A stretch of 63,852 bases of DNA from Asterias rubens (GCF_902459465.1 NW_022985694.1:310001-373852); one strand, 5' to 3'. Counted from the stretch's first letter, positions 1 to 47,100 are shown. The notes: generated from the sequence alone by a model not told the origin. Program-made: numbers and translations.

Positions 1-2
1 TT

Positions 3-6892: not shown

Positions 6893-7034
6893 TTAAAAGG
6901 GTAGCGACGAGTTCTTAAACGGCAGTTAAAACCGGCAGGGTCATGGCATGTGTTCGACGAGGGCCTTTTTTTGACGGCAAAAAAACATGCAAGGTTTTAA
7001 ACGGCCGTTTAAGAACAAGTCACTAGTCTTTTAT
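6893..7034. repeat. Palindromic MITE-like element
   Basis: GACGAGTTCTTAAACGGC ... GCCGTTTAAGAACAAGTC inverted arms. Confidence 0.6.
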
Positions 7035-7880
7035 TCCCATTCATAAATACCTTTTTGGTTTAAAAAAGCATAATAAATCATAAAGTAAGAAACTCTGTTA
7101 AGCTTATCCATTTCCGACGTGCTTGAGCTCCGTGTGTTGCATTGTTATGACTGAGACAACAGTTTTCGAATCTGTTCGTGCGCATATAGTTTTGGTGCAA
7201 GGTGTCTCATTTTCCTTTCACACACAGCACGGCCAACTAACCAACAGCGCCCGCATCGCCCGTAACAAGAAACGTCTTGCACCAAGACTAGCCCAGAGTA
7301 TCCACTCACAACCGGTTATAAACACTGGTCATTATTAAAGGTTTAAACACCCCCACATTTTTTATTTGCAGTTCACATTTTCTCAACCCTTGCGCATTAT
7401 TCTGATATTGGCAGAAAATTACTATATTTCTCCTTCAAATTTGTCAAAAGCAAGCTTGCAACTACCAAATTTAATTGCAGTACACTATGTGCACCCGGGC
7501 AGAAGTAAATTTGAATATGGGACGCAGACGCGCTATATTTTTCGCTGTTCCACTCGAGCTTGTGTGATAACTTGTATAATCCCTAGACTTGGGCCTAGGG
7601 GAGAGGGGTCAAGGAGCTGAATTTGACACACTGTTCGGTTTTTTTTCGAATTCTTTGGCACTAAAAACACAAAAAAATCCACATACATGATTCATTATTG
7701 TGTTCTCTTTTCCTTGAGACTGAATGTGTCTTTTAATGATTTTCTTTTAAGAACAAACACAATTCTTTTTATACAATTATGTAAATAGGTATACAGTAAA
7801 CAGACCATGATATTTTTTTGTTAGAAATTACATGTACAACTGAAATTACTAATCAAAAAGGAAAGCTTCAGAACCTCTGT

Positions 7881-8244
7881 TAAAGACACTGGACACTATT
7901 GGTAATTGTTAAAGACCAGTCTTCTCACTTGGTGTATCTCAACATGAGCATTAGAATAAGTTGTGTACTTTAAGATTTGAAATGCAACGTTAGGAGAATA
8001 TAAAGTGTTGAAGTTTGAATAAAATGTTGTATTGACATCATCCAATTGGCACACTCAGTTATTTTTATCAAATACATGAACTAGGATGTCTAGAAATGGC
8101 CTTTTGCACCCGCTGCCCCCCCCCCCCCCCCAAACCCAAAACAAAAATGTCTGGTAACAACCAACCTCTCCCCATTATACGTTACCAAGTAAGGTTTTAT
8201 GCTAATAAATATTTTGAGTAATTACCAAGTGTCCACTGCCTTTA
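7881..8244. mobile_element. MITE with ~25-bp TIRs
   Basis: TAAAGACACTGGACACTATTGGTAAT / ATTACCAAGTGTCCACTGCCTTTA. The same right end recurs at ~14380-14437. Confidence 0.7.
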
Positions 8245-8537
8245 AAGCTTTGACTGAAACTATAAAGTAATTCCCGCAATAATTATGGGCAAATTAAGAG
8301 GATGTTAAACGAAACCTCCCCCCACCCCCCAAGAAAAAAATAAAAATATAAATGAAGAAACAACTTATTTATATTATTTAATAATATATTACTTTAATAA
8401 TTTATCAATTAAATAATTTATTTATATTATTTAACAATTTTGTTTATTTCTAGCTAAGTCAACAATTATCCATTAAAATATGGCAAGGCTCTGTCCAAAA
8501 CAAGGTAGACCAACACAAACATCTTCAAATAAAACAA

Positions 8538-25169: not shown

Positions 25170-25256
25170 ACTGAAGTGAGCACCAAATTAGGGCCCAACA
25201 CCAAATTTGGTGATGGCAAAAAAATTTGGTGCTAGCACCAAATTTTGATATAACTG
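25170..25256. repeat. CACCAAATT subterminal repeat cluster, probable end of the Sola-like element
   Basis: About five CACCAAATT/AATTTGGTG copies in both orientations. Confidence 0.5.
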
Positions 25257-25304
25257 TCAACGACCGTCATTATCCGTCGAAGACAGTGCGGAAGGATTGT
25301 ACAC

Positions 25305-26153
25305 GCGTAAGGTATGGGTAGATTCAAAGCCAAGAGTTCCATCTTAATTGGGCAATATTATTAATTTTTATTTCATAAATCTATTCCTCATACCCCTGGC
25401 TATATCAGATTAGCGCCCCAGTGTTTGAAGTCTGCTAATTAGCTTAGCCCAATTAATTTAGTCAATGAAGAATATACGAATTTTTGTACTGTATGCGCTG
25501 TATGCGTAAGGTATGGGCAATTACAAAGCCAAGAGTTCCATCTTAATTGGAAAAATTTATTAATTTTTAGTTCATAAATCTATTCCTCATACCCCTGGCT
25601 ATATCAGATTAGCGCCCCAACTTGTTAAGTCTGCTAATTAGCTCAGCCCAATTAAATTAATCAGGGAAGATTTTACGAATTTGTGTACTTTTACGCTATA
25701 CTTATATAACAAGCGCGTAAGGTATGGGAAATTACAAAGCCAAGAGTTCCACCTTAATTGAAAAATATTATTATTTTTTATTTCATAAATCATACCCCTG
25801 GCTATATAAGCCCGGCGCCCAAAAGTGTTAAGTCTTCTTATTAGTTCAGCCCAATTGATTTAATAAGGGAAGAATTTACGAGTTTTTCTACTTTTTACGC
25901 TGTACATTATGCTATACACAAAGAACAAGCGTAAGATACGGGCAATTACAAAGCCAAGAGTTCCATATAAATTGGAAAATATTATTAATTTTTATTTCAT
26001 AAATCTGTTCCTCATACCCCTGGCTATATAAGCCCGACGCCCCAATGTGTTAAGTCTTCTAATTAGTTCAGCCCAATTAATTTAATAAGGGAAGAATTTA
26101 CGAGTTTTTCTACTTTTTACGCTGTACATTATGCTATACACAAAGAACAAGCG
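25305..26153 (+). repeat. ~220-bp satellite, left remnant (~4 monomers)
   Basis: Recurrent CAATTACAAAGCCAAGAGTTCC...CTCATACCCCTGGCTATAT...GCGCCCC units; same family as 58464-63852. Confidence 0.95.
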
Positions 26154-26159
26154 TACACT

Positions 26160-26490
26160 CTGAAAATTAATTAGTCAATTTGACTAAAAAAAAATAGTCC
26201 AGCGTCATGTCTGACACGACTAATTTTAAGTAGTCAAAAGTCTGAGCATGACTAAGGATTTAGTCAGAAATGTGACTAGTTTACATTAGTCCAGTGACTT
26301 GACTAAAAAGATGTCTCATACGACTAATGTTTAGTCCATCAACATTTTGGCTTAGTCCAGCGACTTTTTAGATTAGTCCAGCGACTTTTAATCTTGGTCC
26401 AGTACTTCACTTTAGGTCGTTCGTTGATTTGACTAATGGCATTAGTCAAAGCAACAATTTAAATCTTGACTAGTTGGCATCAGTCAGGAA
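26160..26490. repeat. Subterminal TTAGTC/GACTAA motif array (end A)
   Basis: Dense copies in both orientations. Equivalent arrays at ~31135-31370, ~39280-39600 and ~58210-58450. Confidence 0.85.
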
Positions 26491-27874
26491 TGTCTTCCCA
26501 CGTTCTTTTGATGTACCTGGACATTGTGTATTGTTGCATCATCAAACAAAAAATGGAAAATTGTTCATCCAAAAACAAAATCATTTTCTAAACTGTTTTC
26601 CATGAAAGAAACCATTTAGAATTTAAGATGGATTATAAATTAAAATCTTACTAGAAAGTATACTTCGACAACTTTATACATTCTGAAAATTCTTTAATTC
26701 AAATTTAATCTCAACAAGGCATAACTAATACAATGGTGACTCAAAGTTCATTGAACTCCACACAATTTATAAATAAATAATGTGATAAAATTGCTTGTTT
26801 AAAATTAGCACACTCATTTACCCTTTACTTTCTCAAAAGAGGGTTCTTGAACCCCTACAGTTTCCCTTCAATTTTATTTATCTGCTAAAAATTCCTTCAA
26901 ATATACAAGATGACATTTAAAAAAACAGAGGGTTTTTGCCCAATGTTTATGACTGTATATATTTTCTCCATATTTGTCATATTTTTGTCCAAATGACATT
27001 ACATTTGGCAGATCTGGGGTTATTATAATCAAGAACATCATTGTTTTTAACTGGGGGTCACCGTTGCCAGGTACAACTGCTACTTTTTGAGAAAAAGCTC
27101 CATTGACACTAATTTAAATTTACATCCCTACATCTTTTATGCAAACATTTCAGTCTATTCAAAATGCATTTTTTTCTTAACACAAATGATGCCCAATGAT
27201 GTAAGAATTATGATGTTCAAACTGAGATTATCAAATGGCTATAAGAGATAATGACATCCTGAATCACACGTGTTGTAAAAACATGGATATAATGCCTCTG
27301 TTCACAACAATATTCAAGGAAAACTATTTACTTTCCTATGTTTCAGGTTACCCCCCCCCCCTCCCTATTTAAGAAGAAAACTTCCAACGAACACTGGAAT
27401 AATACAACAACTGTCAAGTCAATATTTTGCCAGAGGCCCATTCACTATTCCAAAGGCACCCTGTCAAAACTATTTGAAGTGAATTGTCACAAGTAAGATT
27501 TAATTCTTAGGGTAAAGGTACGATACAGGATTGGCTTTTGGTTGGATGCATTCAATTCAATTACATCTTAAAACAAACTTGTGATTTGTATCAAAATCGT
27601 TATTAATGTTATAGAGAAATCAATGAACAATGGTTATTTTGTACACATATGGTCAATTTGGGTTGTTAACAAACAAAATCAGATGTTGTTTGTTTTTAGA
27701 TTATCAGGTAGTTTTTTCGAATATGCCCTTATTTCAGGGGGAAACATTTCACAGTCCTAGTACTAACTTCATAACCATTAAGCTTTCAAACAGAAATTCA
27801 ACAATTAAAGTATTTGAGTGATCCTTATCAATCCTGTAATGTACCTTTAAGAAGAATATTCAGTTTATCTTAAC

Positions 27875-28240
27875 AAGACATAATGCTTTGATCAAGAGGA
27901 ACATGCTAATTAAGTGAAATGCAGTTTAACTTGGTTTATTTTAGTAAGACACAATACTTTGAGAGGAACATACTAAGTCAAATGCAGTAAAACTTGTTCA
28001 TAGTAAGACATAATGCGTTTATCAAGAGGAAAAATACTGATGAGTCAAATGCAGCTTAACTTGGTTTACTTTAGTATAAACACACAATGATCTGATCGAG
28101 GGGAACATACTGAGTCAAATGCAGTATATGTACATGTAACTTGTTTATCTAGTAAGACACAATGCTTTGATCAAGAGGAACTACTGAGTCAAATGCAGTT
28201 ACTTGGTTTATGTTAGTAACACATTGCTTTAACCAAGAAA
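27875..28240 (+). repeat. Degenerate ~60-bp tandem repeat (~6 copies); mirrored at ~37515-37880
   Basis: AGTAAGACACAATGCTTTGATCAAGAGGAACATACTGAGTCAAATGCAG-like units. Confidence 0.8.
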
Positions 28241-28251
28241 AATGGTCACAG

Positions 28252-31200
28252 TCAAATGTACCTATTCAGTTTGTCCAGGCAAGATATAACACTGCGGTCG
28301 AGAGGAATATTGTCTTGGATGTTCAGGACAATTTTCTGGAAAAAAGACAAAGTTTTCCTGAGGCATGTGGGATAAGCCAAATTGAAAACATAAAAGCTGG
28401 CTAAATACACTTTCACCGATGTCAGGAGACAAGTGGAGCTGCTGACAGCCAACCCATCAATGATCACGTCAAATGAAGTGCAGTCCTCAAGTCTGTTGTC
28501 ATTACCCTCAATGACAGGCCAAGCTGTCCCCTGTATATGAAAAAATAAATACTTTTAATTAGGGAATAACAGTGTGTTAATTAGGGAATAACAGTGTGAG
28601 GACCTGGTCTTCACTGTGTGGTAATGACCGGGTTGGTGGCTGGCTGTTGTTAATGGACCAAGCCAAAAGCGATTTTCATTAACAGCGGCCATGGTCATTA
28701 CTACCCAGTGAAGACCAGGTCCTCACACTGTTGTTCCCATGAATTAATACCTTTACTGTGAATTTTCACTTGTTCCACAGAACTTGTCTTTACATCACAT
28801 TTTAATACACCCCAACGTGACCACTCTTCGACCAATCACAGTGCATATACTCTCTCTGAGGAGTTTATTAATTCAAAACAACACAAATTGGCCATTGGTA
28901 TGTTGCAGATGCAATTTCAAAAACCCTCATCAGTTTATGAGTATATAAAATGAGACTGCCTCATGCATAGTGTAGGATAAATGGTGGTCCAAGGTCCAAA
29001 TAATGTATTCTTCACTTTTGTTTGTTCAGCCAAAAGTGAATTGTAACCGAAGGTGAATTTGAGAGTTTGTATATCAGTCATTCAAAAATTATCAATGTCT
29101 TTCTTTTCTTGAGTTCAAGTCTTTGTCTTGCGTTTGAGTTGAGTCCAAGTTAAGTCCATGAAGTTGAGTGTTAATTCAACCCAACATGTGACAAATTAAT
29201 ACAAGTTATAATTCAAGTCATGAGTAAGTCAATTAAGAGTTTTGGATTTGATCATTCATTCATAAATATCCCAGACAGTTTCGCTATTCCCAATGGAGAG
29301 CATGTCACATGGGGGTGTTTTTATGTCTGAGCTGGACTTGTTTAAGACCGGTTGGCTAACGCGTGTTAAGCACTCATAGCCACACGCCTACCTTAATGAC
29401 GCAATGCTGACATAAACCATGCCCATTCAAACTTGGCCCTTTATTGCATGGACATGACCCTGCCAGTCTTAAAGGGTCATTTAAGACCTCACTACCACTC
29501 TTTTATTCCCTTATTTAAAAAGCAGAGATGCATCACAAAAACAAGAAACAGAGATGCACTCAATTGTTTAAGTCTACTGGTTAATTATACTGTGTGGAAT
29601 ATGCGCATGCTTATTCAACCAATAGACCATGTTCTTTTGAGTGTTATTGTTTCTTGTTACGGCTGCAGTGTGAGCAACCCTTTACTTACCCCATCTTCAT
29701 CACCCAGAATCAACATATTGCAGATTTTTTCTTTTAGTGTACATGGGATGCCAAGGATGGCAGCAATACTGATAGCTTCTGTAAAAAATGCAGAAAAACA
29801 TACTTATTTTAAAGAATGTTATTCTAGAATGTTAAAGGACTTCCTCGTCTCTGGCTTGGTCCTTCATCACCTTGTCACATGACTGTTATAAAACCCTGCA
29901 ATATAAGAAACAGTTTTCCTATGCTAATTACAGGAGGTCCAGTTGACAACTGGCTCTGTATATAAATGAAACGAATACACAGCGCATGGATTGGGGGTGG
30001 GTGCTAAACTGCATTTTCCTTCAGTTTCATTTGTAGCTGAATGGCATCCCCATGGGTCACTTGAAATTGTTTTCACACCATGACAAAAAGTGCCAGTCAT
30101 TAACATGCTCTGTACAAATGAATATGCAGTTCTACGCTCCATTACACAACACGCAGCTTCATAAAGGTATGAGGCTTTAGGACTGAGGGTCACATGTGGT
30201 TGTAGGTTACACACCTGTACGACTCTTTTCATTCCGTTGGTGACTAATAATGTCCAAGGCCTGCTTGAAACATGCTGCTGGATTTTTGACACCACTGACA
30301 AGCCTGTTGACTGCATTGCCATACTTCATCATACCTGCATCAAAGAGCTGATTGATGGTCTCTTCTCCAGATCGCAGACGATTGAATTCTACCAGTATCT
30401 GTCGGTGTCAATAAAGTTATGAATTACTTGACCTGTATATCTGCATGTGTTAGGATGGCAATGGCCTTTTTTTTGTGCATGCCCTCAAGTATTTGCAAAG
30501 TGTTTGTGATTCTTCTTGTTTGCGCCTGTGTATTTGATATCAAAAGTTGTAATAAATAAATTTGAATTTACCAAAACATGTACTACAGGTTTTTTATTGG
30601 GGGTAGTGTGACCTTTCACCCTACCACCTGCTCAAATCCTAACGGGTGAACTAACTAACTCTTCCTTTGGACTATTTTTGGTACACCTCACACAAACCAC
30701 TTTTGCCATATGTGTTAGCTCTAACTAGGTGTCATTCATACTAAGTCTCGACCAATTAAACAAATGAGATTTTTTCAATGAAAAGTAAAAGTCAATGAAG
30801 TAGAAGTCGGTTAGTTTCCTTCTTCTCTTAAAGTTAAGAGTCACCTGTACACTTGACATGTATGTTGCCAAGTTTAAAAACAAACTTGATCATCTTGATA
30901 GAGGTGAATAAGGGCTTCTTAAAAATAAAAATAAAATAAAAAAGACGAGATGCCTGCCAAACAAGCATTTAAGTTTACAATGGCCACCAAAACAAATATA
31001 ATCATGAATAATGATCGTCGTGCACACAGAGAGGGCAAAGCAGGCTGGTGAAACAAAGTTTGGCTACGTTGATGTGTTTATGAGATTCATGTCCATTAAT
31101 GTAATAACAGAAATAATGTACACTGTAAAAAATAGTTAGTAAATCTTGCTTATAAATTGGTCAAAATGACTAAGTTTGCCTAGTCCTGTGTCTCTGACTA

Positions 31201-34200
31201 ATGTAATGTTAGCCTGACTAATCTTATATTTGCTGTGACTAATCACTATAAGTCAGAACTTTAACCCGTGACTAGAATTTTGTTTGGACTAAAACGATTT
31301 AGTCAAAATGTCGGGTTTTGACTAATTTTGACTGGTATGAAGCTACGGTGCTTTGACTAAGTAAGATTGGTCATGTTCCCGCCTTCCCAACATTTTAGAT
31401 GTGGGAAAAATATAAATTGCCCGCGAATTAGCAGGATGCTGGTACCCGGCGGCAACGTCAATGTATAGTTAGTGTGTAACTTGGGTTTTTAGCTTGTACC
31501 CGTTAACTTGCAAACTGCAGCTAGCATGCAGGGCGTACATGATACTCTCCCGTTCGGCGTGTGTGATACATACACTTCACAGGGCAAGGAGGCTCAATCC
31601 AGGCTCCGACCAGTTTCAGAAATAAGGTGAGAATATTGGTTTTCCCGTTACATTTTTAAAACCGTAACATACTTAGCCAGAGGGAGACCGTTACATTGAC
31701 GTTAGTCTACAATCATATTGTGGAAAAGCTTTTAGTGTTTTTGGCCACAGAACTCTAGGTGCATAGGCCAGCACTTAACGGCGGCTAGGCCTTGCATTAC
31801 GTGTCAAAATGGAGCATGCAGGCGAAGTTTATCAGGTAGATTCAAGTTTAAAATCTCTGATTTTCACCCTATAATTAATATTGCCAGACTGAGAATTTAA
31901 TGTAGAACACTTTATTGTAAAGTTTGTATATTTTCAAGATATAGCGACTGTAAAAGGACGAAACAAAAAAGCTTGTTTAGCATGTTGTTGTTTTTCCAGT
32001 GGGGCTACGGGCGTGTGTATAGTGTACGTGTGTGTACACAAACGATGGTCCTAATCATTGTAGTTTGTATGCAATGCATGCCCTTGCTTTAGGCTTTACT
32101 GCACGACACATGATGTGCAAGGCCTAGTCGGTTAATGTTTAAATCAACCCATGCTATATTATAATATTATGGGGATGGTCAAAGCTTATTATTTATTGGC
32201 CATCATAAAGTGCGGTCCTAAATGTCTTCCAATCAGCAAGGACTTTACATTTAAAAATAAGTTCATATTCATAACTAACTTGAATTTGAAAACATGGGCA
32301 TTAAAGTTTCCATGTAACAAACGTAGGCCTAACGACAAGTAACAAGTAATAACGGTAGCATGTTCGGAAAATCAAGTGTACCAAGCGATGGAATGTAGTT
32401 ATCGCAACTCTATAGTCCATCAGCCCCAAATTTTGGACTATCAAGTTAAGACTTATAATGTAGCAACTAACGAGGACAAGGTATAATTCTTTAAATGTTT
32501 ACTGAAGCACAAAGTATTGATACTTTTATGTTGCACCTCATAATTTTTTTAATGATTTAGTTGTAAAAAATCATTTTATACATTCCATTGTACACATGAT
32601 TTATTTCCTTTAAAAAATAAGGCTTCAGGAATGCCAACAAAAATAGGTCACTTGCTGACAATGGCTGGATTCTCAATGTGACATCATCTTACATGTTTCC
32701 TGAGCTATTCCAGAAAACAATTGTTCTGAAATGGGGTCTGTCAAATGAATGACAAATATGTGTTTTTTCTTTTAACAAACTCACTCAATTCTGTTCAATG
32801 AATGTGAGGTCATGTTGAGAATCTAGCCATGTCAAAAAGTGACCTATTTAGGAGTTCATGAAGACAATTATTTTTAAAGGAAATAAATCATTTAAAATTA
32901 CACAGGGATGCACAAGACTTTTTTCCAACTTAATCATTTAAAAACAATATAAGGTGCAATATCAAAGCATCATACTTTGTATTTCAGTAAACCTTTAAAT
33001 ATATGTAATAATTGCATCATGGGAAATGAGTAAAACAAATGTCTTGCCCTACACCGATGTGATAAGCACTGTATACTCAGGAGCTTTCAAGTCCTGGGGA
33101 AAAAGTTCCACAGGCAACTCAGGTGGGTTTCGAACCCACGACTTAACCACTAGACCACTGAGCAAGGCGGATCCAGTATTATTTGCAGTGGGTACCGGGC
33201 TTGGTGGTCTAGACATCTGCTGTAGTCACGCAGGAGTCATAGGTTCGAATCCTGACAAGGGCCCAATTTCATAAAGCTGTTTACCGGTAAGCACATTTTT
33301 GTGCTTACTGTTGCAGAAAAATGTGCTCAAGCATACATATGTAAACGTATTTCATTCACCATGATTTCTCAAGTTAGCAGAAAATTTCGCAGCGCGCATG
33401 CACGTTCACCATGGATTTGCATTGTTACGTCACTCATGTGCTAACAGCGGGTTAGCCAGCATTTACCCTTGCTTACGATAAACAGCTTTATGAAATAGAA
33501 ATTCTGCTGAGGGAACTGCTGCTTACATCTTTTATGAAATTGGGACCATGTTGCCTGTGGAATTTTTTATCCGCAAGACTCGAAAGCACTGAATATATAT
33601 TCAGTGCTTATCACATCGGTGTAGGGCAAAACAAAATTTTAAGGCATCATCTATACTCACACCACACTGAATATTTGTTCCTTTTTAGCACAATTATAAG
33701 CCACAGACTTCACAGAACTTGGAGAGAAAATATTTTGACAACCATCTCCACTGAGTGGGGATTGTTTTATGCAAAAAATAATAACCATCAGAACTGTGAG
33801 CTCTTTTGTTTTGTTTACAGCTTAGCTTGCTTAATTGTATGTTCTGATTGGTTGCCATTCAAGTTCTAAATATAAAACAGCACCTGTAACTCAAATGCGG
33901 GACAATACATCTTTCAAACATTGTCTTTTTAAAATCCATCCTGTAGATTTAAATAGATAAGATGTTTCATTTAAGATTTTCTGTTATTTTGAATACTTTT
34001 ATTTAATAGTAAAGTTGTAGGTTTTGCTATATTTCCGTTGTAGTCTGAGCAGCTTTGTCCTGTGAGAAACCCATTTCATCATCAGCAGCATGTCTTGGAA
34101 GGCAAGGTTAGTTTCTAATTTTTGTTATTCTCTAAACCGCCAAGATTTGAATTTGGCTTATGGGTCATTCCATGTCAGTTCAACAGGCTTTTGGACCTGA

Positions 34201-37200
34201 CCTTCACGGATCGACACAAAATTTGGTGTGCTGATTTGACTTACTGAGAAACCCCCAGAACTGAATTTTTATGTCATTCAGATAATTACTTTTTGAGATA
34301 CAGGTTAACAAACTTTTGACTAATTAGCTTGACCCTCTATGTTTGGACAACCATATCTCCAAAAGTAAAGCACCCACATAACACTTTCCACTATTTTAAA
34401 GCTCTTGACGGAGAAAAAAATTCCACTTAGCATTTAACAAAATTACGCACAATTTTTTGGGGGGTGGGGGGGGGGCATGTGGGGGCAAAGATTTTACTTT
34501 TGGGGCCCAAGAAGTGCAAGCCATTTAATATGTTACTTGATTTACACATTTTAAAAAAACATTTTTTATGATTTCAATGAGGGTTGGGGGGGGGGGGGGA
34601 GGAGGAGGGGGTGGAGGCCGCCCTGCCCCCACCCCTTCTAATTATGCCACTGCACATGAGTCATGTCATGGGACATGTTTTTAAAGTACAGTACTAACTA
34701 TTATAGGCCTACTGTATACACGTGTACATGATGTACGTGTACATGATGTACGTGTACATGATGTACGTGTACATGATGTACATGTACAGCTGTATACATG
34801 TATGTACACCTGCATATGTACATTCATTTAAAGTTTTTAACCTTTATAGCCTGTGTTCATATTATCATAACTCCAAAACTGTAAGAGTGCCCATCCTAAA
34901 TTTTTCTGAAAATGTTGCTTATATCATGAGCTAACAATGAAAAAATTACGCATTTTGAAAACTATACATTTTCGCAATCAAGGGCAAATGTCACATTTGT
35001 GCGTAATTTTGTTGTGCTACGTGGAATTTTTTCTCCTTATTTTATTAAATGAAGGCCATGTCAAGAGCTTTAAAATAGTGGAAAATTTATTTATGTGGGT
35101 GCTTTACTTTTGGAGATATGGTTGTCCAAACATAGAGGGTCAAGCTAATTAGTCAAAAGTTTGTTAAGCTGTATCTCAAAAAGTAATTATCTGAATGACA
35201 TAAAATGTCTGTTCTGGTGGTTTCTCAATAAGTCCATTCAGCACACCAAGTAACGTTTCAATCTGTGTTGGTCAAGTCCAAAAGCGTGTTGAATTGACAC
35301 GGAATGACCTATTGTCATGTTTTGATAACCATCTCTAAAAATAAAACACCTAGGGGCCTACAGTGATAATTTTTACACCAGTTTAAAGCTCTTAATATGT
35401 CCCAGATTTCATAAAAACTAAATCAACATTATATTATGTACCACAAAAACATTAATTACGCAAAAAAATTACATTTGACCTTGATTAGCAAGGTCATTTT
35501 TTTTATATGTATAATTTTTATCTCAATGTTAGCTTAAGATGTACATTAGCAATATTTCTAGAAAAGGTTGGGATGGGCACGCGCACAGTTTGAATTATGA
35601 TTATTTGAACAATGGCGGTTAAGGATGAAAACTTAAAAAGTATGTACATATGCGTGTGCTTATTATGTGCATGTATAATAATGTACATGTGTAAAAATAT
35701 TACCTTTGACCTTGATTAGCAAAATGCATTTTTCAAAAGGCATAATTTTTATCTCATTGTTAACAATATTTCTAGAAAAAAACTGAACAATATGTCAAAC
35801 TGAACAATATGTCAAAAAATTATGACATACAATTTTAATTATCAATTTTGTTTTCAAAGTCCTTTAAAAGCAGTCATGTGACAAGGTGATGAAGGACCAA
35901 GCCAGAGACGAGGAAGTCCTTTAACATTCTAGAATAACATTCTTTAAAATAAGTATGTTTTTCTGCATTTTTTACAGAAGCTATCAGTATTGCTGCCATC
36001 CTTGGCATCCCATGTACACTAAAAGAAAAAATCTGCAATATGTTGATTCTGGGTGATGAAGATGGGGTAAGTAAAGGGTTGCTCACACTGCAGCCGTAAC
36101 AAGAAACAATAACACTCAAAAGAACATGGTCTATTGGTTGAATAAGCATGCGCATATTCCACACAGTATAATTAACCAGTAGACTTAAACAATTGAGTGC
36201 ATCTCTGTTTCTTGTTTTTGTGATGCATCTCTGCTTTTTAAATAAGGGAATAAAAGAGTGGTAGTGAGGTCTTAAATGACCCTTTAAGACTGGCAGGGTC
36301 ATGTCCATGCAATAAAGGGCCAAGTTTGAATGGGCATGGTTTATGTCAGCATTGCGTCATTAAGGTAGGCGTGTGGCTATGAGTGCTTAACACGCGTTAG
36401 CCAACCGGTCTAAAACAAGTCCAGCTCAGACATAAAAACACCCCCATGTGACATGCTCTCCATTGGGAATAGCGAAACTGTCTGGGATATTTATGAATGA
36501 ATGATCAAATCCAAAACTCTTAATTGACTTACTCATGACTTGAATTATAACTTGTATTAATTTGTCACATGTTGGGTTGAATTAACACTCAACTTCATGG
36601 ACTTAACTTGGACTCAACTCAAACGCAAGACAAAGACTTGAACTCAAGAAAAGAAAGACATTGATAATTTTTGAATGACTGATATACAAACTCTCAAATT
36701 CACCTTCGGTTACAATTCACTTTTGGCTGAACAAACAAAAGTGAAGAATACATTATTTGGACCTTGGACCACCATTTATCCTACACTATGCATGAGGCAG
36801 TCTCATTTTATATACTCATAAACTGATGAGGGTTTTTGAAATTGCATCTGCAACATACCAATGGCCAATTTGTGTTGTTTTGAATTAATAAACTCCTCAG
36901 AGAGAGTATATGCACTGTGATTGGTCGAAGAGTGGTCACGTTGGGGTGTATTAAAATGTGATGTAAAGACAAGTTCTGTGGAACAAGTGAAAATTCACAG
37001 TAAAGGTATTAATTCATGGGAACAACAGTGTGAGGACCTGGTCTTCACTGGGTAGTAATGACCATGGCCGCTGTTAATGAAAATCGCTTTTGGCTTGGTC
37101 CATTAACAACAGCCAGCCACCAACCCGGTCATTACCACACAGTGAAGACCAGGTCCTCACACTGTTATTCCCTAATTAACACACTGTTATTCCCTAATTA

Positions 37201-40200
37201 AAAGTATTTATTTTTTCATATACAGGGGACAGCTTGGCCTGTCATTGAGGGTAATGACAACAGACTTGAGGACTGCACTTCATTTGACGTGATCATTGAT
37301 GGGTTGGCTGTCAGCAGCTCCACTTGTCTCCTGACATCGGTGAAAGTGTATTTAGCCAGCTTTTATGTTTTCAATTTGGCTTATCCCACATGCCTCAGGA
37401 AAACTTTGTCTTTTTTCCAGAAAATTGTCCTGAACATCCAAGACAATATTCCTCTCGACCGCAGTGTTATATCTTGCCTTGACAAACTGAATAGGTACAT
37501 TTGACTGTGACCATTTTTCTTGGTTAAAGCAATGTGTTACTAACATAAACCAAGTAACTGCATTTGTCTCAGTAGTTCCTCTTGATCAAAGCATTGTGTC
37601 TTACTAGATAAACAAGTTACATGTACATATACTGCATTTGACTCAGTATGTTCCCCTCGATCAGATCATTGTGTGTTTATACTAAAGTAAACCAAGTTAA
37701 GCTGCATTTGACTCATCAGTATTTTTCCTCTTGATAAACGCATTATGTCTTACTATGAACAAGTTTTACTGCATTTGACTTAGTATGTTCCTCTCAAAGT
37801 ATTGTGTCTTACTAAAATAAACCAAGTTAAACTGCATTTCACTTAATTAGCATGTTCCTCTTGATCAAAGCATTATGTCTTGTTAAGATAAACTGAATAT
37901 TCTTCTTAAAGGTACATTACAGGATTGATAAGGATCACTCAAATACTTTAATTGTTGAATTTCTGTTTGAAAGCTTAATGGTTATGAAGTTAGTACTAGG
38001 ACTGTGAAATGTTTCCCCCTGAAATAAGGGCATATTCGAAAAAACTACCTGATAATCTAAAAACAAACAACATCTGATTTTGTTTGTTAACAACCCAAAT
38101 TGACCATATGTGTACAAAATAACCATTGTTCATTGATTTCTCTATAACATTAATAACGATTTTGATACAAATCACAAGTTTGTTTTAAGATGTAATTGAA
38201 TTGAATGCATCCAACCAAAAGCCAATCCTGTATCGTACCTTTACCCTAAGAATTAAATCTTACTTGTGACAATTCACTTCAAATAGTTTTGACAGGGTGC
38301 CTTTGGAATAGTGAATGGGCCTCTGGCAAAATATTGACTTGACAGTTGTTGTATTATTCCAGTGTTCGTTGGAAGTTTTCTTCTTAAATAGGGAGGGGGG
38401 GTAACCTGAAACATAGGAAAGTAAATAGTTTTCCTTGAATATTGTTGTGAACAGAGGCATTATATCCATGTTTTTACAACACGTGTGATTCAGGATGTCA
38501 TTATCTCTTATAGCCATTTGATAATCTCAGTTTGAACATCATAATTCTTACATCATTGGGCATCATTTGTGTTAAGAAAAAAATGCATTTTGAATAGACT
38601 GAAATGTTTGCATAAAAGATGTAGGGATGTAAATTTAAATTAGTGTCAATGGAGCTTTTTCTCAAAAAGTAGCAGTTGTACCTGGCAACGGTGACCCCCA
38701 GTTAAAAACAATGATGTTCTTGATTATAACAACCCCAGATCTGCCAAATGTAACGTCATTTGGACAAAAATATAATGACAAATATGGAGAAAATATATAC
38801 AGTCATAAACATTGGGCAAAAACCCTCTGTTGGTACTTTTTTTTTTAAATGTCATCTTGTATATTTGAAGGAATTTTTAGCAGATAAATAAAATTGAAGG
38901 GAAACTGTAGGGGTTCAAGAACCCTCTTTTGAGAAAGTAAAGGGTAAATGAGTGTGCTAATTTTAAACAAGCAATTTTATCACATTATTTATTTATAAAT
39001 TGTGTGGAGTTCAATGAACTTTGAGTCACCATTGTATTAGTTATGCCTTGTTGAGATTAAATTTGAATTAAAGAATTTTCAGAATGTATAAAGTTGTCGA
39101 AGTATACTTTCTAGTAAGATTTTAATTTATAATCCATCTTAAATTCTAAATGGTTTCTTTCATGGAAAACAGTTTAGAAAATGATTTTGTTTTTGGATGA
39201 ACAATTTTCCATTTTTTGTTTGATGATGCAACAATACACAATGTCCAGGTACATCAAAAGAACGTGGGAAGACATTCCTGACTGATGCCAACTAGTCAAG
39301 ATTTAAATTGTTGCTTTGACTAATGCCATTAGTCAAATCAACGAACGACCTAAAGTGAAGTACTGGACCAAGATTAAAAGTCGCTGGACTAATCTAAAAA
39401 GTCGCTGGACTAAGCCAAAATGTTGATGGACTAAACATTAGTCGTATGAGACATCTTTTTAGTCAAGTCACTGGACTAATGTAAACTAGTCACATTTCTG
39501 ACTAAATCCTTAGTCATGCTCAGACTTTTGACTACTTAAAATTAGTCGTGTCAGACATGACGCTGGACTATTTTTTTTTAGTCAAATTGACTAATTAATT
39601 TGTAGAGTGTAATGGCATACCTCTTCTTCATCGAACAGCCATGGATAAACTTCTTGGATCTCCTTAATGGTTGCTTTGCCTCCAGTAATGAGTTGTCGAC
39701 GATCCGCTAATGTTGCACACATTGCCAACTGGACACGCTCATGGTTGGGTTTCTTTTTTTTTGTTTCTTGCTTCATCCATGTTATGTGGGCATTGATCGA
39801 GGCGTCATCTTCTGAACTTGGGCGTAACGGCTTGTAGTTAGTCACGCCCCACTGTGGAGGAGACTGCTTCTTGGATATGGTTGAGTAGTTGTCTGATGTT
39901 GACTTCCTCTTGTGCAGCAGGACTGATGGTATGTTTTGGTCATCACGCTTGCGGGAATTGGCAAATTTATACTGCAACCTGTATTTCCAGAGACTCTGAA
40001 ATCCATTTTATACACAACAGTATTATATAAATTAATACTAAAAAAATAGTGAAAATTTGTATTCATTATCCCCTATGCAAAATTACTTAAATTTAAAAAT
40101 TTTTACTTTACCGTTTGTCACAAACAAAAATCTAACTTATCAACTTATACTTACTTGGGCATTGTCTAAAGTCATGTTAGGCTGACGGGCCAAATGAGGC

Positions 40201-41100
40201 ATTTTCTCCAAAAGAAGATGTGTTATCTTGTTGTACTGCTCAGACGTAGGATAGCTGGTTGAGAGAAAAAATTACAAGATGAAAGTAAAAGTCCAGGCCA
40301 CTAGCCCATTTTCCACCATACATGGGATGAAAAGCAACAGAATTTGTTTAACCAGTTTATTTGTGTGATATCTATATTAGTCATGTATCAATATTATATG
40401 TTAATACCTATCGAACCGACACAGTATTTAGTCCAGAGCATTTTGCTATTTCTATGAACACTGGTCTTCTCATGATTGAGATGAGGAGGGAGCATTTGAT
40501 CTCCCTTCACCCTCAATGTTAAGAATACTATAGAATAGCTTTTTTTTGCACACAATGAGATGATGCTCTTGAGGTATAATCTAAATGCACTTTGGTAAAA
40601 CATTTTTTTGTTTTTTTCGGGGGGTGGGGTGGTCACCTGACACCACAATGTACCAAATCCCAGTATAGCCAAACTACACTTTGTAGGTGTATGTGCTGCA
40701 TTATTGTAGGTGTTGAATCATTTAAATTTCCTGACTGATTCCTCTGCAAAGTTGAGAAAGTACTCAAATGATTTAACAAAACATTAAGCATGATCAACCT
40801 TATACTTTGAACTCAAGTTCTGATGGCCGGCCGAGTCACCAGAGTGTGGGTTCGAGTCCTGGTTATGACACTTGTGTCCTTGAGCAAGACACTTAACTTT
40901 AATTGCTTCAACCAGGAGTAAATGGGTACAGAGATCGTTGATGTGAATGATAAGTACGTGTGCGCCGAAATGGCTGTCGTAGTGGGGCTGCATACTAAAG
41001 GAGTTGAGATGGTTTCAGGAATGCTTAAGGCCCCATGAAGAGGGGGTAGTAATGTTGTAGGCACTTTGATACAATGCTTAAAAGTGCCTACATAAATGCC

Positions 41101-41140
<40 letters not shown>

Positions 41141-44100
41141 CTTACTATGTGTGCTTTGTTATGCTACTGTAAATAGCATCTAACATAGCTGACCTCTCCC
41201 CTTCCTTCAGCACTTGGCCCGTTTCCAGCTTTTGACATATGGCAGGAGGAAAATCTGGTAGGTTGTACCCCTTCAACCAGTTGCTAGATAGTATCCGTGT
41301 AGTTGATGCAGTCTGAATGAAAGTTGCACATGCAACATCAGAGGCTTCTTCAGGGCTATCAAAAGTAGTGCGAACAAAGGAATAAAAATACATTGTGATA
41401 TTTTTTAACAGAAAGTTTACTTTTTTAATGTCAGTCTCAATGTGTTTGTAGTGTTTTGTTATCAGTCCGGAGACAATTAAGGAAGGCCTGACACCTTGTT
41501 TTTGGGTTGCTCACTGATACGTTACTCTGCTGACAGATTTATTCACCATCCGAAGAAAACCTATTACAAACATAGATCCATAAATCTAATTAATTATCAT
41601 GCATGTAACGACTAATATTTAAGATTACTTTTCCACAAGTAGCCTTCCACCTCAGTTACACTAAACAAGTCTACATAACACTTAATTATAGGCCGGATAC
41701 ATATCCATACAACGTGAACTTCAGATCATGTGCTGTATATTGATCAACCATTGTTACCCAGTTTCACCCAAATTAACCCTCTAAATTTCTACTCACCAAC
41801 CGATCCGTTCCTCTATTTATTGGCAATCAAACTGGCTCCATGAGCGGGTCTCTCCAACTTCTTCCTCCACCCCGAATGTTGGATTTTACCCTCTCATCAT
41901 TGTCATACGTGACACTCATTTAGAGACCAACAACGAAAAAGGACGCAACAAATAGACCCCTCCGCCTAAACCGGCTAAAATTACTATGCTACACACTGAT
42001 TAATTACCAAACTCACCTATAATGAGCTGAATATTGAAAATAGCATAGTGAATATTTGTAATAATGTGACCAATTACATTACATACAAGAATAAAGACGA
42101 GATTGAGACCCAAATTCTTTCTCAGATAAAATAATCCAAAAAGTTATGCCTTTTTACATCCTTGACATTTGTATCCGTGCGACTACCGTTTAAGTACAAT
42201 GGCGCCCTCTATCGTTTACCAAAGTCATTCAACAAACTTTTTATCACCGTAATTAACGAAATGCCCATGGGTATCATAAAATATTGATTCATCACATTCT
42301 CCCCTACTAGTTCGATCAACTCCTGAGGATCGATTGAATGATTCAGCATCACATGAGGATAAAAATGTTCCCCTTAATCTTACAAATAAGCGAATCATAC
42401 TAATCACCAAAATACATTATGTATACCATCTTTCTCGCACCAACCCATATTTGCTTTATAGAACAGAGAAAACATTTGAACAAAAGTTACATGTATTTAA
42501 CCAAACTTTTTGTTTTTCTTTAAACCTACAAGAAAACACAATTAGCATATTATCATCTGACATTAATTATGCCCATATGCGAGATTCAAAGTACTTTGTT
42601 ATCTGACGAAGCGTTTTCTCATACAGTGCCCTTCCCGAAGTGTTCAGGTGGACCCCATCAAGGTTATACCGAGAGTTCTTTAACCCTCTGTGCTCCCACA
42701 ACCACCATTGGTCTTCCACAAAGGTCGACTGCTGAATAAGATCATTAAATCTCTCTGCTCGATCATTAAATTCTTCGAGTGAGACCTGACCACCCCGTAA
42801 ACCTCCTGTCCTAGGGAGTACTGGCAGAAACACTATTACCTCTGGGTTAATACCCCTCTTGGGTAACTCATACACAAAGTCACAGAGTGAAGAATGCACT
42901 TGGTTTGGATTAACATTTTTAGAACACAAATCATTTGTACCCAAGTCAATAATTAAAACTAAAGGATTTGCCTGCCGTAAATATTCATAATACTTCCTCG
43001 GCCTTGCCCGAATCCTACTTAAAGTGAGACCGCCCTCACCAATACATGTAACAGGAACTACCTTACTCTGTAACTCAATTTTAAACTGAGAACCTCGCTT
43101 CCTTTTCAAGCGTTTAACAAAACTGTGCCCAAAAAGGACAAAACTCATTTTCCGTTTAAGAACACAATACTACAAAAGGGGGAGGAAGCCCTATCAACCC
43201 ACTCCTTTACCACTTAATCAATTACAAATTTACACAATTTCCTAACACCATGTCAGTCCACTGGTAGCCAGAATACCCAGTGGTGCCCTACAGTAAGGTG
43301 TGCCATTGCGGAAACTGGATGCCCCAAGTCTTTCCAGCAAGACAACTCCCTGACCTTCTGCAATCACTGAGAACCCCCGCCACCAGAGTAAAGACAAATC
43401 ACTTAATAGCTGAACAGGGCAATCTGAATGGATTGCTGTGTTTACCCCTTGTAGTTCGTTGAGAACTTCTTAGGTGCTCAGATGCAGGGCAATGTAAACT
43501 TGGGGGCTCCCCTACTTCTACATTGCTCACGCCCTGTAAATCTTGAACCAGAGACTGATCCCCTGAAGGCTCAGTGTGTAGGACCTCCCAATCTGAATCT
43601 CCATCAGACTCATCACTCTCATTTTCTGTGTCACTTTCTGCAAAGGGATCTAACCGCAAGAGTTTTCTATTAACTACTCTTTCTGGGCCCCCCTTCAAGG
43701 GACGGATACGAAATACATCGCTATGCTCATTTATCCAAACGACCACATATGGGTCTCTTTCAAACTTGTCAGCCAGTTTGTGGCGTCCCTTGAATGCGCA
43801 TTTTCTGAGTAGAACATGGGACCCAATCTCAATAGGTTTGCTAGGTTTTACTTTCCTATCATAAGTAGCCTTGTTGCGATTGCAGCTTTTTGCTACTCGT
43901 TCCTTTACTAACTCACTAGCTCTAGAGAGCAAAGAAGATTGTTCTCTGACAAAATCTTGATCCCAATCGTTATCAGTTCTCCCCAACATCTGGTCTAGAG
44001 GTATCAATGGTTCCCTACCAAACATAAGCAAATACGGCGCTACTCCAGTGGTGCAATGCGGAGTAGCATTATACACAAATACAAGGTGCTGTAAAAGGTC

Positions 44101-47100
44101 AGGCCACCTCCGCCTATCCCGCTCATCCATGGACTTAATGAGTCCAAACAGAGTCCGGTTAAAGCGCTCTGTTTGAGCGTTCCCCTCGGGGTGGTAAGGA
44201 GTTGTTCTGGTCTTTTTCATGCCGTACAATGCACACAATTCCCTCACAACTTCCCCTTCAAAATTCCGACCCTGGTCGCTGTGCAAACGACAAGGTATTC
44301 CATATTTGGAAAACCACTGATTCCTCAAGACTTTGGCAACAGTTACTGCATGTTGATCCTTACACGGATATGCCTGTACAAATTTTGTATAGATGTCGGT
44401 CATGACCAGAACATCCTCATAGCCTCCTGCCCCTCGATCAATTTTGACAAAATCTATGGCTAGCACTTCGAGTGGTCGAAATGCTAAAAGGTGCCGCATT
44501 GGCACTTTTGCTTGAGGCTCTGACGCCTTAGAGATTACACATTGTTCACAATGACCGATATGCCGACGCACTGAACCAGCCATTTTGGGCCAAAACACCC
44601 GCCGCCTCAGGAGGGCACACGTTCTCACAACACCTTGATGCCCCCACCCATCATGACAACCCTCTAACACCCTCTGTTGTAAACTTGTGGGCATCAGTAC
44701 TTGATCTAGTTCACCATGCAATGGGTCCATGACACGACGATGTAAAACACCATCCTTTTCTATGAACCTGGGCCACTGCCACAACCACGATTTGATTTCT
44801 ACTGGCTCCTCCCTTTCAGCCTGAAAAACTTCATTCGGTTTCCAACCTTGATCCCAACGTTCCCAGATACACTTCAGCACTGGATCAGCCCTTTGTAGGG
44901 CAGACAGCTGCTCTGGTGTCCACGATGGGAAAATACCTGATTGACACTTAACCTGTGGAGGTCCAGCCTTTGTATCATGAGAAGTTAATACCTTATGTAC
45001 CTCTATATGTTGCAATGGAACCACTGTGGAGTGGACCTTACATTGCAGTATTTCCTCAACTTCCCCTGTTAGTGAGTGACTTGGGTTGCGACTTAGTGCA
45101 TCCGCTACACGATTACTAGCCCCTGATCTAAATTTCACATCAAAGGTAAAAGCTGCAAGTTGTGCTATCCAGCGCATTTCACATGCGCCCAACTTAGCTG
45201 TCTGTAGATAAGATAAGGGGTTATTATCTGTTAGCACTGTAAATGGTACCCCAAGGAGATAATCTCTAAATTTATCAACCACAGCCCATTTTAGGGACAA
45301 AAGCTCCAACTTAAAAGAACTAAAATCGGGGTACCTAGCTTCAGCCCCCCTCAGCCCCCGACTAGCAAATGCAACTGGATGTCTCTTGCCTTCCTTGTCG
45401 CACTGAGCTAAACAAGCTCCTAAACCCTGCAAGGAGGCATCTATCTCCAACACAAATGGCCTAGAAAAATCTGGATATGCAAGCACTGGTGCTTGCGTCA
45501 AGGTCTGCTTTAATGTATCAAAGGCCACCTGTGCCTCAGAACTCCAACAAAATGGCGAAGGTTTGGATCTCGAATTTCCCTTAGCCAGTGAGGGCACTAA
45601 AGCATGCAAGGGTGCGGCAATTTTTGAAAAGCCGGGTACAAAGCGCCGGTAATAACCGGCCAGACCAAGAAATGACCGCAATTGTGCCCCTGTCTTAGGT
45701 ATTGGCCAATCCTCAATTCTCTTAATCTTGTCATTGTCTACTGCAACACCCTCTGGCCCTACCACATGTCCTAAGTAAGACACATGCCTACGAAATAACT
45801 TGCACTTTGCACCCTTGATCTTAAGTCCAAAATCTGCCAATCTAGTGAAGACTCTGTCAAGCCTATCTATGTGTTCCTGTACCGTAGAGGAATATACCAG
45901 GATGTCATCTAAATAGATTAAAAGCTCTGATAAATTCAAGTCACCAAGGCACATCTCCATCACTCTCTGAAAGGTTCCAGGGGCATTTACCAGCCCGAAC
46001 GGCATTCTCGTATATTCGAACAGCCCAAAAGGTACTCTGAATGCAGTTTTACTTATTGATTCTGAGTCCATTACAACCTGATGGTATCCATGGGCTAAAT
46101 CTAATGAAGAAAAGTACCTTGCACCCTGGAGCGCCTCCAGCGACTCCTCGATACGAGGCAATGGAAATGAGTCTCGTACTGTTTTGGCATTAAGCCTCCT
46201 ATAATCAACACAAATCCTTAGCGACCCATCCTTCTTTTGGACCAATACAATGGGGCTGGCATAGGGGCTTTTACTCTTTTGTATGATACCTTGATCAAGA
46301 AACTTCTGGAGTAATTCCCTAACTTCTCTAAAATGTTGCGGCGGAATTCGTCTGTAAGGCTGGCTAATTGATTTATCATCAGTAGTGTCAATCTTGTGGG
46401 GAACCTTATCACAAAGTCCTAAATCCAACGAATTCTGCGAGAACACCTTATCATGTTTCTGAATTAATTGCACAATTTTGTCCTGGTCTTCCTTACACAA
46501 ATCAGCGCATAAATCAAGACTTAATCCATAAGGAAGTTGGTACTCTGACCCATCCTCAAACACATACAACTCTCTTGCCCGTGACTCTACAGCATCCCCC
46601 ATCTCAATGTCTAACTCATTGGAATCGACACCAGGGGCTCCCTCAGTACGACCAGTGTCTAAATATTCCCCAGACTCTGACAGACAATGATTCACTACAA
46701 CATGAACACAATCCACACCCGTCTCAAGTGCAACATTTGTCTTTGAAGATACCTCAGTCACGTAAGCAAGCTTTGTGTGTGGGGACAATTCAATCACCCG
46801 CATCCCTACATTCGCTACCAACACATTTACAGTTCTACCACTAACTACTGTACACAGATCGTAAACGCGGCAATTTCCATCTATGTTACTGGTTTGACCT
46901 CCACTATCTGCACAGCTAGATAGACCCTCAACAAGGACAGTTTGCCCGTCAAGGCTACTTTGATTAGCCTGAACATAGCAGGTTATACTACGCACTTCCC
47001 TAGGCAACAAATGTACTGGATTTCTACCTGTACGAGCACCCAGTGGGTCCCGTACACACTTATTTGCCCCATGTGACCCCTCAACTACTGGGTTTTTAGT

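What the first reader, a model, noticed from the sequence alone, without database searches (positions are those of the whole stretch)
26156..39609. Element inserted into itself in reverse: a candidate natural hairpin 'killer' locus
Seen: a deletion derivative with its own TA TSD sits antisense in parent intron 5, creating inverted repeats of ~3.7 kb (26156-29885 / 35871-39609) and ~4.75 kb (31121-35872 / 53707-58461). A parent pre-mRNA would contain both arms of each pair, and the derivative retains the promoter end pointing the opposite way. Known: local hopping is typical of CACTA elements, and maize Mu killer is an inverted partial duplication whose hairpin RNA silences its family. Inference: this locus could yield long dsRNA and siRNA/piRNA against the family, and is prone to inversion or deletion.
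Basis: partly seen in the sequence, partly recalled or inferred. Interest (0 to 1): 0.7.

Follow-up and report, generated by a model that had tools for sequence, protein, structure and literature searches.

The report
Transposon copy nested backwards in itself
A shortened copy of a young sea-star "cut-and-paste" transposon has really jumped, backwards, into an intron of a full-length copy of the same family, which makes kilobase-long inverted repeats that could give double-stranded RNA, but nothing yet shows that the locus silences anything.

Summary
A 15.2-kb CMC/EnSpm-type DNA transposon (P, 26156-58461, genes on the minus strand, intact 809-aa transposase) sits in a 222-bp satellite. It carries two nested insertions:
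- D (31121-39609), an 8,489-bp internally deleted family member in reverse orientation with a TA duplication.
- A young Ty3/gypsy element (41447-50057).

Copies of P elsewhere in the genome show the single-TA empty site. D lies 9 nt past a GT donor confirmed by an RNA contig, so it is intronic. The inverted pairs are 3.7 kb and 4.75 kb, about 99.3% complementary rather than identical, and D has private substitutions. A contig from an independent 2024 run bridges the D/parent junction. An assembly artefact is therefore unlikely.

- The same deletion junction occurs at another locus, so D belongs to a mobile non-autonomous subfamily. It is no closer to its host than to other copies.
- The two repeat pairs interleave, so they cannot both form in one RNA.
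- The same-sense LTR element lies between the arms of the long pair.

The family is transcribed and spliced. One RNA contig carries a cluster of seven antisense-strand A>G changes, but a local hairpin could explain it.

No small-RNA or junction-spanning RNA evidence exists. A Mu-killer-like function stays a hypothesis (about 15%).

The parts
25196..26153 (.). Left flank: 222-bp satellite monomers into which the parent is inserted
   Evidence: Direct-repeat families D1/D2. Intact target sites are found in neighbouring monomers.
26154..26155 (.). TA target-site duplication of the parent (left copy). The right copy is at 58462-58463.
26156..58461 (-). Parent element P. It spans 32,306 bp including nested inserts, 15,200 bp of its own. 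Imperfect ~25-bp TIR starting CACTC/CACTG. GACTAA/TTAGTC-type subterminal repeats number 15 and 10 per terminal 500 bp against 0.42 per 500 bp inside.
   Evidence: Full-length 15.2-kb copies without inserts are on C32 and C15.
26156..29892 (-). Arm A: the parent's 3' arm. It holds the last two exons of the family mRNA (equivalents of 35978-36066 and 37225-38804), the 3' UTR and the subterminal repeats.
29893..31118 (-). Parent-only segment between arm A and the D insertion site. It is part of the 'loop' of the A/A' pair.
31119..31120 (.). TA target-site duplication of D (left copy). The right copy is at 39610-39611.
   Evidence: The empty site in C32 and C15 has one TA.
31121..39609 (+). D: an 8,489-bp internally deleted, non-autonomous family member, inverted relative to P. 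It has private substitutions inside both TIRs.
   Evidence: The same junction occurs on C35.
31121..35872 (+). Arm B': D's 5' arm, the reverse complement of 53707-58461. It contains a 5' exon ending about 34104-34106.
35863..35872 (.). Deletion junction of D, with 10-bp microhomology. It joins the parent equivalents 53707 and 29892.
   Evidence: Overlap of the two BLAST matches. The 551 bp across it match at 100% on C35.
35873..39609 (+). Arm A': D's 3' arm, the reverse complement of 26156-29892. It holds exons 35978-36066 and 37225-38804 of the spliced family RNA.
39621..39995 (-). Exon of the parent's accessory gene. The GT donor is at 39620-39619 and the upstream intron is 39996-40154. D lies 9 nt into the downstream intron.
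   Evidence: RNA contig ends and joint. Canonical splice sites. An open 125-codon frame. Homologous exon products are 57-76% identical in related elements, one of them on the same contig as a 78% identical transposase.
41447..50057 (-). Nested Ty3/gypsy LTR retrotransposon, 8,611 bp. LTRs are 41447-42296 and 49208-50057 (850 bp, 4 mismatches). The TGTT duplication is at 41443-41446 and 50058-50061. It encodes gag, pol and a GDSL-type ORF and has the same orientation as the parent's genes.
50868..53297 (-). Intact single-exon transposase ORF, 809 aa. It has two N-terminal C2H2 fingers and D279, D373, C393-x2-C396, H602-x3-H606 and E626.
53707..58461 (-). Arm B: the parent's 5' arm, with subterminal repeats, a presumed promoter and the 5' exon.
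58484..63852 (.). Right flank: the array of the same 222-bp satellite

Best explanation
This is a real, young nested insertion and, most likely, nothing more. A low-copy, recently active CMC (CACTA/EnSpm-type) DNA transposon family of a sea-star genome includes full-length 15.2-kb copies and several internally deleted copies.

- D is an 8.5-kb deletion derivative. It formed once, by a deletion between 10-bp microhomologies, and then moved in trans.
- D transposed with a TA duplication, in reverse orientation, into an intron of the accessory gene of a full-length copy that itself sits in a satellite monomer.
- The family occupies only about 0.02% of the assembly. Landing in a sister copy is therefore best explained by short-range (linked) transposition or by a preference for such sites. 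This is inference.

The result is two interleaved inverted-repeat pairs, A/A' of 3.7 kb and B'/B of 4.75 kb.

- If the host accessory gene is transcribed through its enlarged intron, the RNA carries D in antisense. It can pair A' with A within one molecule, or pair with sense RNA of any family member.
- D's own 5' arm can drive converging transcription.

These outcomes follow from the structure and have not been observed. Silencing of the family by this locus is not shown.
For: - Repeats and their limits.
- Precise ends, TA duplication and single-TA empty sites in C32 and C15.
- The arms differ at 25 substitutions, and D has private changes in both TIRs. D is a separate copy, not a duplicated assembly path.
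- A contig of an independent 2024 run (X3, record 14, 39572-40395) bridges the D end and the parent intron.
- The same deletion junction, with a TA duplication, occurs on C35. Other deletion derivatives lie on C35 and C99.
- The census finds only 7 B ends and 10 A ends in 417.6 Mb.
- The transposase ORF is intact and carries the CMC signature.
- The family RNA is spliced at canonical GT-AG sites in runs X5 and X9, and this joint is absent from DNA runs X1 and X3.
- Intron placement of D.
Against: - In X1, the best holder and probably the source sample, no listed contig bridges the junction. The contig that crosses the site (record 6, 2,524 letters) has the length expected for the empty site. 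The arrangement in the source individual therefore rests on the assembly itself.
- The assembly of this family is imperfect elsewhere. The C15 copy has one flank of the C32 locus and one satellite flank next to an N gap. Other copies show many single-base indels.
- A functional role cannot be excluded. One RNA contig shows seven clustered changes that read as A>G on the element's antisense strand.
Confidence: 0.75

Rival explanations
1. The locus works as a natural trigger of silencing, in the manner of Mu killer. Host-gene or LTR-driven transcription through the intronic, antisense D yields long dsRNA (an A'/A hairpin or sense/antisense duplexes) or antisense piRNA precursors. These are processed into small RNAs that repress the whole family in trans.
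For: - Kilobase arms at 99.3% complementarity lie within one transcription unit.
- The arms contain the 5' exon, the last two coding exons and the 3' UTR that all family transcripts share.
- The family is expressed.
- An RNA contig of X5 carries 7 T>C and no other change at 35542-35605, while all six genomic copies have T. This means A>G on the antisense strand, and none of the sites has a 5' G.
- Sea stars make TE-derived piRNAs with a ping-pong signature (PMC6085071).
- Inverted transposon duplications trigger silencing in maize (PMC3440606; bioRxiv 10.1101/2020.01.07.897926).
Against: - No RNA contig crosses either D/parent junction.
- No small-RNA data were examined.
- The edited stretch lies in an arm of a local imperfect inverted repeat (34807-34945 / 35518-35658). 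This repeat exists in every copy, so the nested locus is not needed to explain the editing.
- That contig has depth 2.7.
- The family is still expressed at appreciable contig depth in two RNA runs.
- The B/B' pair needs a 27-kb transcript through a same-sense LTR element.
Confidence: 0.15
2. Assembly artefact. A D copy from another locus was wrongly placed inside a full-length copy when repeat-rich long reads were assembled on an unplaced scaffold.
For: - The window lies on a small unplaced contig, C24.
- Other copies show signs of chimeric or redundant assembly.
- X1's listed contig crosses the site in the empty form.
Against: - Both junctions are exact element ends with a TA duplication of a site that is single elsewhere.
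- D has private substitutions not seen in the C35 copies.
- An independent run bridges junction 39609/39612 (record 14).
Confidence: 0.07
3. The arrangement arose by aberrant ('alternative') transposition or by recombination between two neighbouring copies, not by simple insertion.
For: Such events create inverted duplications of Ac/Ds (bioRxiv 10.1101/2020.01.07.897926).
Against: - D has two proper ends and a TA duplication at a site that is intact in other copies.
- D exists with the same deletion junction as a free element at another locus.
Confidence: 0.03

Closest known systems
Mu killer (Muk) of maize
   Same: It is an inverted partial duplication of an autonomous DNA transposon. The arms include a terminal region and part of a gene, and they could form a ~4-kb hairpin RNA (PMC3440606).
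   Different: - Muk is a rearranged partial copy read from a flanking gene's promoter, and its siRNAs and heritable silencing are demonstrated.
- Here a complete non-autonomous element with a target-site duplication sits in an intron of an apparently coding-competent full-length copy.
- The host is an animal, which lacks RNA-directed DNA methylation of the plant type.
- There is no small-RNA or genetic evidence.
Ac/Ds composite insertions with inverted duplications (Wang et al., bioRxiv 10.1101/2020.01.07.897926)
   Same: A transposon's own activity creates inverted repeats of its sequence. These are transcribed from the element's or a flanking promoter and could start silencing.
   Different: Those arise by alternative transposition with re-replication and contain fractured Ac pieces. 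Here the event is an ordinary insertion.
Double Ds of maize (one Ds inserted in reverse into another; recalled from the classical literature, not retrieved here)
   Same: The architecture is the same: a family member inserted in inverted orientation into another member. It gives extra, differently oriented pairs of ends close together.
   Different: - Double Ds is two identical short non-autonomous copies and is known for chromosome breakage.
- Here the host is a full-length copy of another superfamily, and no breakage or rearrangement is documented.
En/Spm with dSpm/I derivatives (CACTA, plants)
   Same: - It is an autonomous element with internally deleted derivatives.
- It has CACT(N) ends and subterminal short repeats.
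- A family mRNA is spliced from a 5' exon over the transposase region to 3' exons.
   Different: - The duplication here is a 2-bp TA instead of 3 bp.
- The host is an animal.
- The transposase has N-terminal C2H2 fingers.
- The accessory gene has no Pfam match.
Antisense transposon insertions in piRNA-producing transcription units (trap model)
   Same: A family member in antisense inside a transcribed unit supplies antisense precursor RNA. Sea stars have TE piRNAs (PMC6085071).
   Different: Nothing shows that this locus is a piRNA source. The 'trap' here is another copy of the same element, not a dedicated cluster.

Membership tests
CMC (CACTA/EnSpm-Mirage-Chapaev) DNA transposons | [quoted passage not shown] | tested here: met
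   D279, D373, C393-x2-C396, H602-x3-H606 and E626 are invariant or nearly invariant in 13 aligned relatives.
CMC (CACTA/EnSpm-Mirage-Chapaev) DNA transposons | Sequence relationship to Transposase_21 (PF02992) proteins | tested here: inconclusive
   The window protein has no Pfam match at E<=0.01. Six of its relatives, at 29-37% identity with E<=1e-101, carry a precomputed PF02992.
CMC (CACTA/EnSpm-Mirage-Chapaev) DNA transposons | Ends 5'-CA..TG-3' (CACT.. in CACTA) and a 2-5 bp target-site duplication | tested here: met
   The ends are CACTC.../CACTG... and the duplication is TA at six sites, one with a sequenced empty site.
CMC (CACTA/EnSpm-Mirage-Chapaev) DNA transposons | Subterminal arrays of short repeats (CACTA type) | tested here: met
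   There are 15 and 10 GACTAA/TTAGTC-type hexamers in the terminal 500 bp, against 0.42 per 500 bp inside.
Mu-killer-type hairpin silencer | Inverted duplication of sequence of an active transposon family | tested here: met
   Arms of 3.7 and 4.75 kb at 99.3%. The family is young and expressed.
Mu-killer-type hairpin silencer | A transcript that contains both arms (hairpin RNA) | tested here: inconclusive
   Only assembled contigs of RNA runs were available. None crosses 39609/39612, and they carry no strand information.
Mu-killer-type hairpin silencer | Small RNAs derived from the arms | not testable with these tools
   No small-RNA reads could be laid.
Mu-killer-type hairpin silencer | Dominant, heritable silencing of the family in trans | not testable with these tools
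   This needs genetics or carrier/non-carrier comparisons.

The most novel reading that the evidence does not exclude
The nested, reversed copy is the natural starting point of small-RNA silencing of a still-active CACTA-type transposon family in an echinoderm. This would be an animal counterpart of maize Mu killer. The host copy's own transcription, or the read-out of the LTR element upstream, turns an intronic antisense D into dsRNA or piRNA precursor. The antisense-strand A>G cluster would be its first trace.
Probability: 0.15. Interest if true: 0.75.

Novelty: new member of a known kind. Interest (0 to 1): 0.4.

Why it matters
How a genome first recognises a newly active DNA transposon is well worked out in only a few plant cases (Mu killer, Ac composite insertions). 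This locus offers an animal test case:
- The family is young and low-copy.
- It has an apparently intact transposase.
- Its deletion derivatives are mobile.
- One natural locus places the family's shared exons in both orientations within a single transcription unit.
- The locus seems polymorphic between samples.

If carriers and non-carriers exist in populations, the effect on small RNAs and on family expression can be measured directly. If no effect is found, the locus remains a clean example of local self-insertion and of target-site choice in a satellite.

Tried and rejected
- **Descent from the host copy.** I asked whether D is the host's own offspring. Substitution counts on both arms give a star-like pattern, and D is no closer to its host (25 differences) than to C15 (19). 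Direct descent cannot be claimed.
- **Reads as proof of structure in the source sample.** The Logan contigs break at repeat borders. The one listed X1 contig over the site looks like the empty form. Only X3 gives a bridging piece.
- **RNA across the junction.** None is listed.
- **A>G cluster as proof of the long hairpin.** Rejected as proof. A local imperfect inverted repeat present in every copy covers the sites. The 300-nt local fold alone is not exceptional, z = -1.2.
- **Identity of the accessory gene.** Pfam gave nothing on nine open segments. The exon-wise word search found only unnamed fragments. tblastn of 120 transposase relatives found no accessory-gene part. The protein atlas was busy twice. 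I did not build a joined spliced model; exons were searched one by one by reference.
- **Broken transposases in other copies.** Their 7-9 single-base indels in short runs, against 5 substitutions, look like assembly errors, so no conclusion was drawn.
- **Literature on 'double Ds'.** The search found nothing usable. That comparison rests on my own knowledge.
- **Handling limits.** N runs in fetched loci (C35, C15, C11) were left as they are. No contig looked human. The LTR retrotransposon was only described.
Full report
**1. What is in the sequence**

The window is G000:C24:310001-373852 of a 417.6-Mb assembly. The inverted-repeat scan finds the two claimed pairs, split into pieces by small indels. 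BLAST of 31119-39611 against the window gives two matches:
- Positions 1-4754 of that stretch match 58463-53707 (16 mismatches, 9 gap openings).
- Positions 4745-8493 match 29892-26154 (8 mismatches, 4 gap openings).

Both matches are 99.3% identical. Their 10-bp overlap (35863-35872) is microhomology at an internal deletion junction.

The inner element D is thus 31121-39609 (8,489 bp). It consists of the parent's 5' arm (B) joined to its 3' arm (A), turned round. D is bounded by TA|CACTG... and ...GAGTG|TA. Two full-length copies elsewhere (C32, C15) read aataatgTAatggcat across the site, with one TA. This is an exact insertion with a 2-bp duplication.

**2. The parent**

P spans 26156-58461 and is flanked by TA on both sides. 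It interrupts one monomer of a 222-bp satellite, whose intact site AGAACAAGCG-TA-AGATACGGGCAA recurs 17 times in the window. Without its two inserts P is 15,200 bp, the length of the C32 and C15 copies.

The second insert is a Ty3/gypsy LTR retrotransposon at 41447-50057:
- It has 850-bp LTRs with 4 mismatches and a TGTT duplication.
- It encodes gag, pol and a GDSL-type ORF.
- It has the same orientation as P's genes.

I only describe it.

P's transposase ORF (53297-50868, 809 aa) is uninterrupted.
- Its relatives are in holothurians, a brittle star, molluscs and fishes, and six of them carry PF02992.
- An alignment of 13 relatives shows D279, D373, C393xxC396, H602xxxH606 and E626 conserved. 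This is the CMC/CMCT signature described in PMC12730594.
- The ends start CACTC/CACTG with an imperfect TIR of about 25 bp. The terminal 500 bp hold 15 and 10 GACTAA/TTAGTC-type hexamers, against 0.42 per 500 bp inside.

**3. Transcripts**

All runs on offer were Logan contigs. Runs X5 and X9 carry a joint 36065/6 to 37225 with GT..AG that DNA runs X1 and X3 lack, so X5 and X9 are RNA.

The X9 contig (1,771 letters) continues upstream into 30 letters that map to 34075-34104 in arm B'. All sites are canonical. The family therefore makes a spliced RNA with these parts:
- a 5' exon in arm B
- a 90-nt exon
- a last exon of about 1.6 kb in arm A, of which about 93 codons are coding

In a full-length copy the first of these introns would skip the transposase ORF, as in En/Spm tnpA. 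In D that intron is 1.87 kb and contains the deletion junction. D keeps all three exons.

On the minus strand of P, RNA contigs define intron 39996-40154. A contig ends exactly at 39621, where the open 125-codon exon meets GTATGC. D's TA lies at +10/+11 of that intron. The exon's product has 57-76% identical counterparts in related elements, one on the same contig as a 78% identical transposase.

**4. Is it an artefact?**

Evidence against an artefact:
- The ends and the duplication are exact.
- There are 25 substitutions between D and its host, and private changes in both of D's TIRs.
- X3 record 14 (828 letters, 39572-40395) comes from another study, carries another organism label, and bridges the D end and the parent intron.

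Cautions:
- X1, probably the source sample, shows no listed bridging piece.
- X1's contig over the site has 1,261 further letters, the length expected of the empty form.
- Assembly of this family is untidy.

I put an artefact at about 7%.

**5. The family in the genome**

The census finds 7 B ends and 10 A ends.

| Kind of copy | Where | Notes |
|---|---|---|
| Full-length | C24 (this one) | hosts D and the LTR element |
| Full-length | C32 locus | also assembled as C38 and C83, same flank |
| Full-length | C15 | B flank equals C32's, A flank is satellite; probably chimeric |
| D, same junction | C35 | present twice, inverted, with the same flank |
| Other deletion derivatives | C35 (54979/29940) and C99 (57397/51047) | different junctions |
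| A-end fragment | C11 | 2.64 kb |

I did not check that it is the C35 copy.
- All copies differ by 0.1-0.5% in a star-like way.
- D is therefore a mobile non-autonomous subfamily, not this parent's private product.
- The family is only about 0.02% of the genome, and derivatives also cluster on C35. A hit inside a sister copy argues for linked transposition or site preference. This is inference.

**6. How it could work**

On a minus-strand pre-mRNA of P the order is B, (LTR element), upstream exons, A', B', parent-only segment, A.
- The pairs B-B' and A'-A interleave, so both cannot form as plain hairpins in one molecule.
- B-B' would also need 27 kb of transcription through a same-sense LTR element.
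- A'-A (stem 3.7 kb, 5,969 nt between the arms) only needs transcription of the accessory gene through its enlarged intron.
- D's 5' arm points the other way, and family RNAs are seen running out past an A end (records 21 and 31). Converging transcription is therefore also possible.

None of this was observed at this locus.

**7. A hint of editing**

An X5 contig over 35500-35772 differs only by seven T>C changes at 35542-35605.
- All six genomic copies have T there.
- Read on the antisense strand these are A>G, and none of the sites has a 5' G.
- This suggests ADAR-type editing of antisense family RNA.
- The sites lie in a local imperfect inverted repeat present in every copy.
- The contig depth is 2.7, and the source locus is unknown.

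**8. Comparison and verdict**

In structure this resembles maize double Ds. In proposed action it resembles Mu killer (PMC3440606) and the Ac composite insertions (bioRxiv 10.1101/2020.01.07.897926). As an element it is an animal CMC/EnSpm relative with TA duplications. Sea stars have TE-derived piRNAs (PMC6085071), so a small-RNA test is feasible.

It is a new member of a known kind, of moderate interest.

Noticed in passing
window 26154-26155 and 58462-58463; L008 (C15) A end; L012 (C99) B end at 4741: Three family ends abut the same TA of the 222-bp satellite monomer (AGAACAAGCG-TA-AGATACGGGCAA), in two orientations. The satellite occurs on at least ten chromosomes. This may reflect a target preference, or accumulation in satellite DNA.
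   Followed up: partly
window 35542-35605: An RNA contig of run X5 shows seven T>C changes and no other difference. All six genomic copies have T there. This reads as A>G on the element's antisense strand, inside a local imperfect inverted repeat 34807-34945 / 35518-35658.
   Followed up: partly
L006-L008 (G000:C15:12619507-12634711), L003-L005 (C32), L010 (C83), L011 (C38): The chromosome copy on C15 shares its B flank with the C32 copy, but its A flank is satellite and an N gap lies 420 bp away. It is probably a chimeric join. C32, C38 and C83 carry the same A flank, so they are one locus assembled three times.
   Followed up: partly
L001 and L002 (G000:C35:156940-165417 and 241561-~250050): Two D copies with the identical A flank lie in opposite orientation 76 kb apart on one contig. 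A third, different deletion derivative lies between them at 193159-200428. This is either a real inverted duplication or scaffolded haplotigs.
   Followed up: no
L004 and L007, transposase region: The C32 and C15 transposase copies show 7-9 single-base indels in short runs but only 5 substitutions against the window copy. These are most likely unpolished assembly errors, so indel counts between copies are unreliable.
   Followed up: partly
window 31141 and 39602: D has private substitutions inside both terminal inverted repeats. One of them is in the first TTAGTC subterminal motif. This copy may bind transposase less well.
   Followed up: no
window 34104-38804 (and the equivalents in P): The family mRNA is spliced from a 5' exon in the 5' arm directly to the last two exons, skipping the whole transposase region. 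This is an En/Spm tnpA-like layout in an animal element. In run X9 this form has a contig depth of about 249, while the upstream accessory-gene exons have none.
   Followed up: partly
window 42567-43148: The nested gypsy element carries a GDSL/SGNH-type ORF after pol. This is already the subject of earlier finding s1-150190.
   Followed up: no
window 40819-41015; window 203-781: A microsatellite inside the parent gives contig depths above 3x10^5 in DNA runs. A 21-bp tandem array lies at the start of the window.
   Followed up: no
L013 (G000:C11:17165106-17167746): An isolated 2.64-kb A-end fragment of the family lies on a chromosome-scale contig, with no matching B end nearby.
   Followed up: partly
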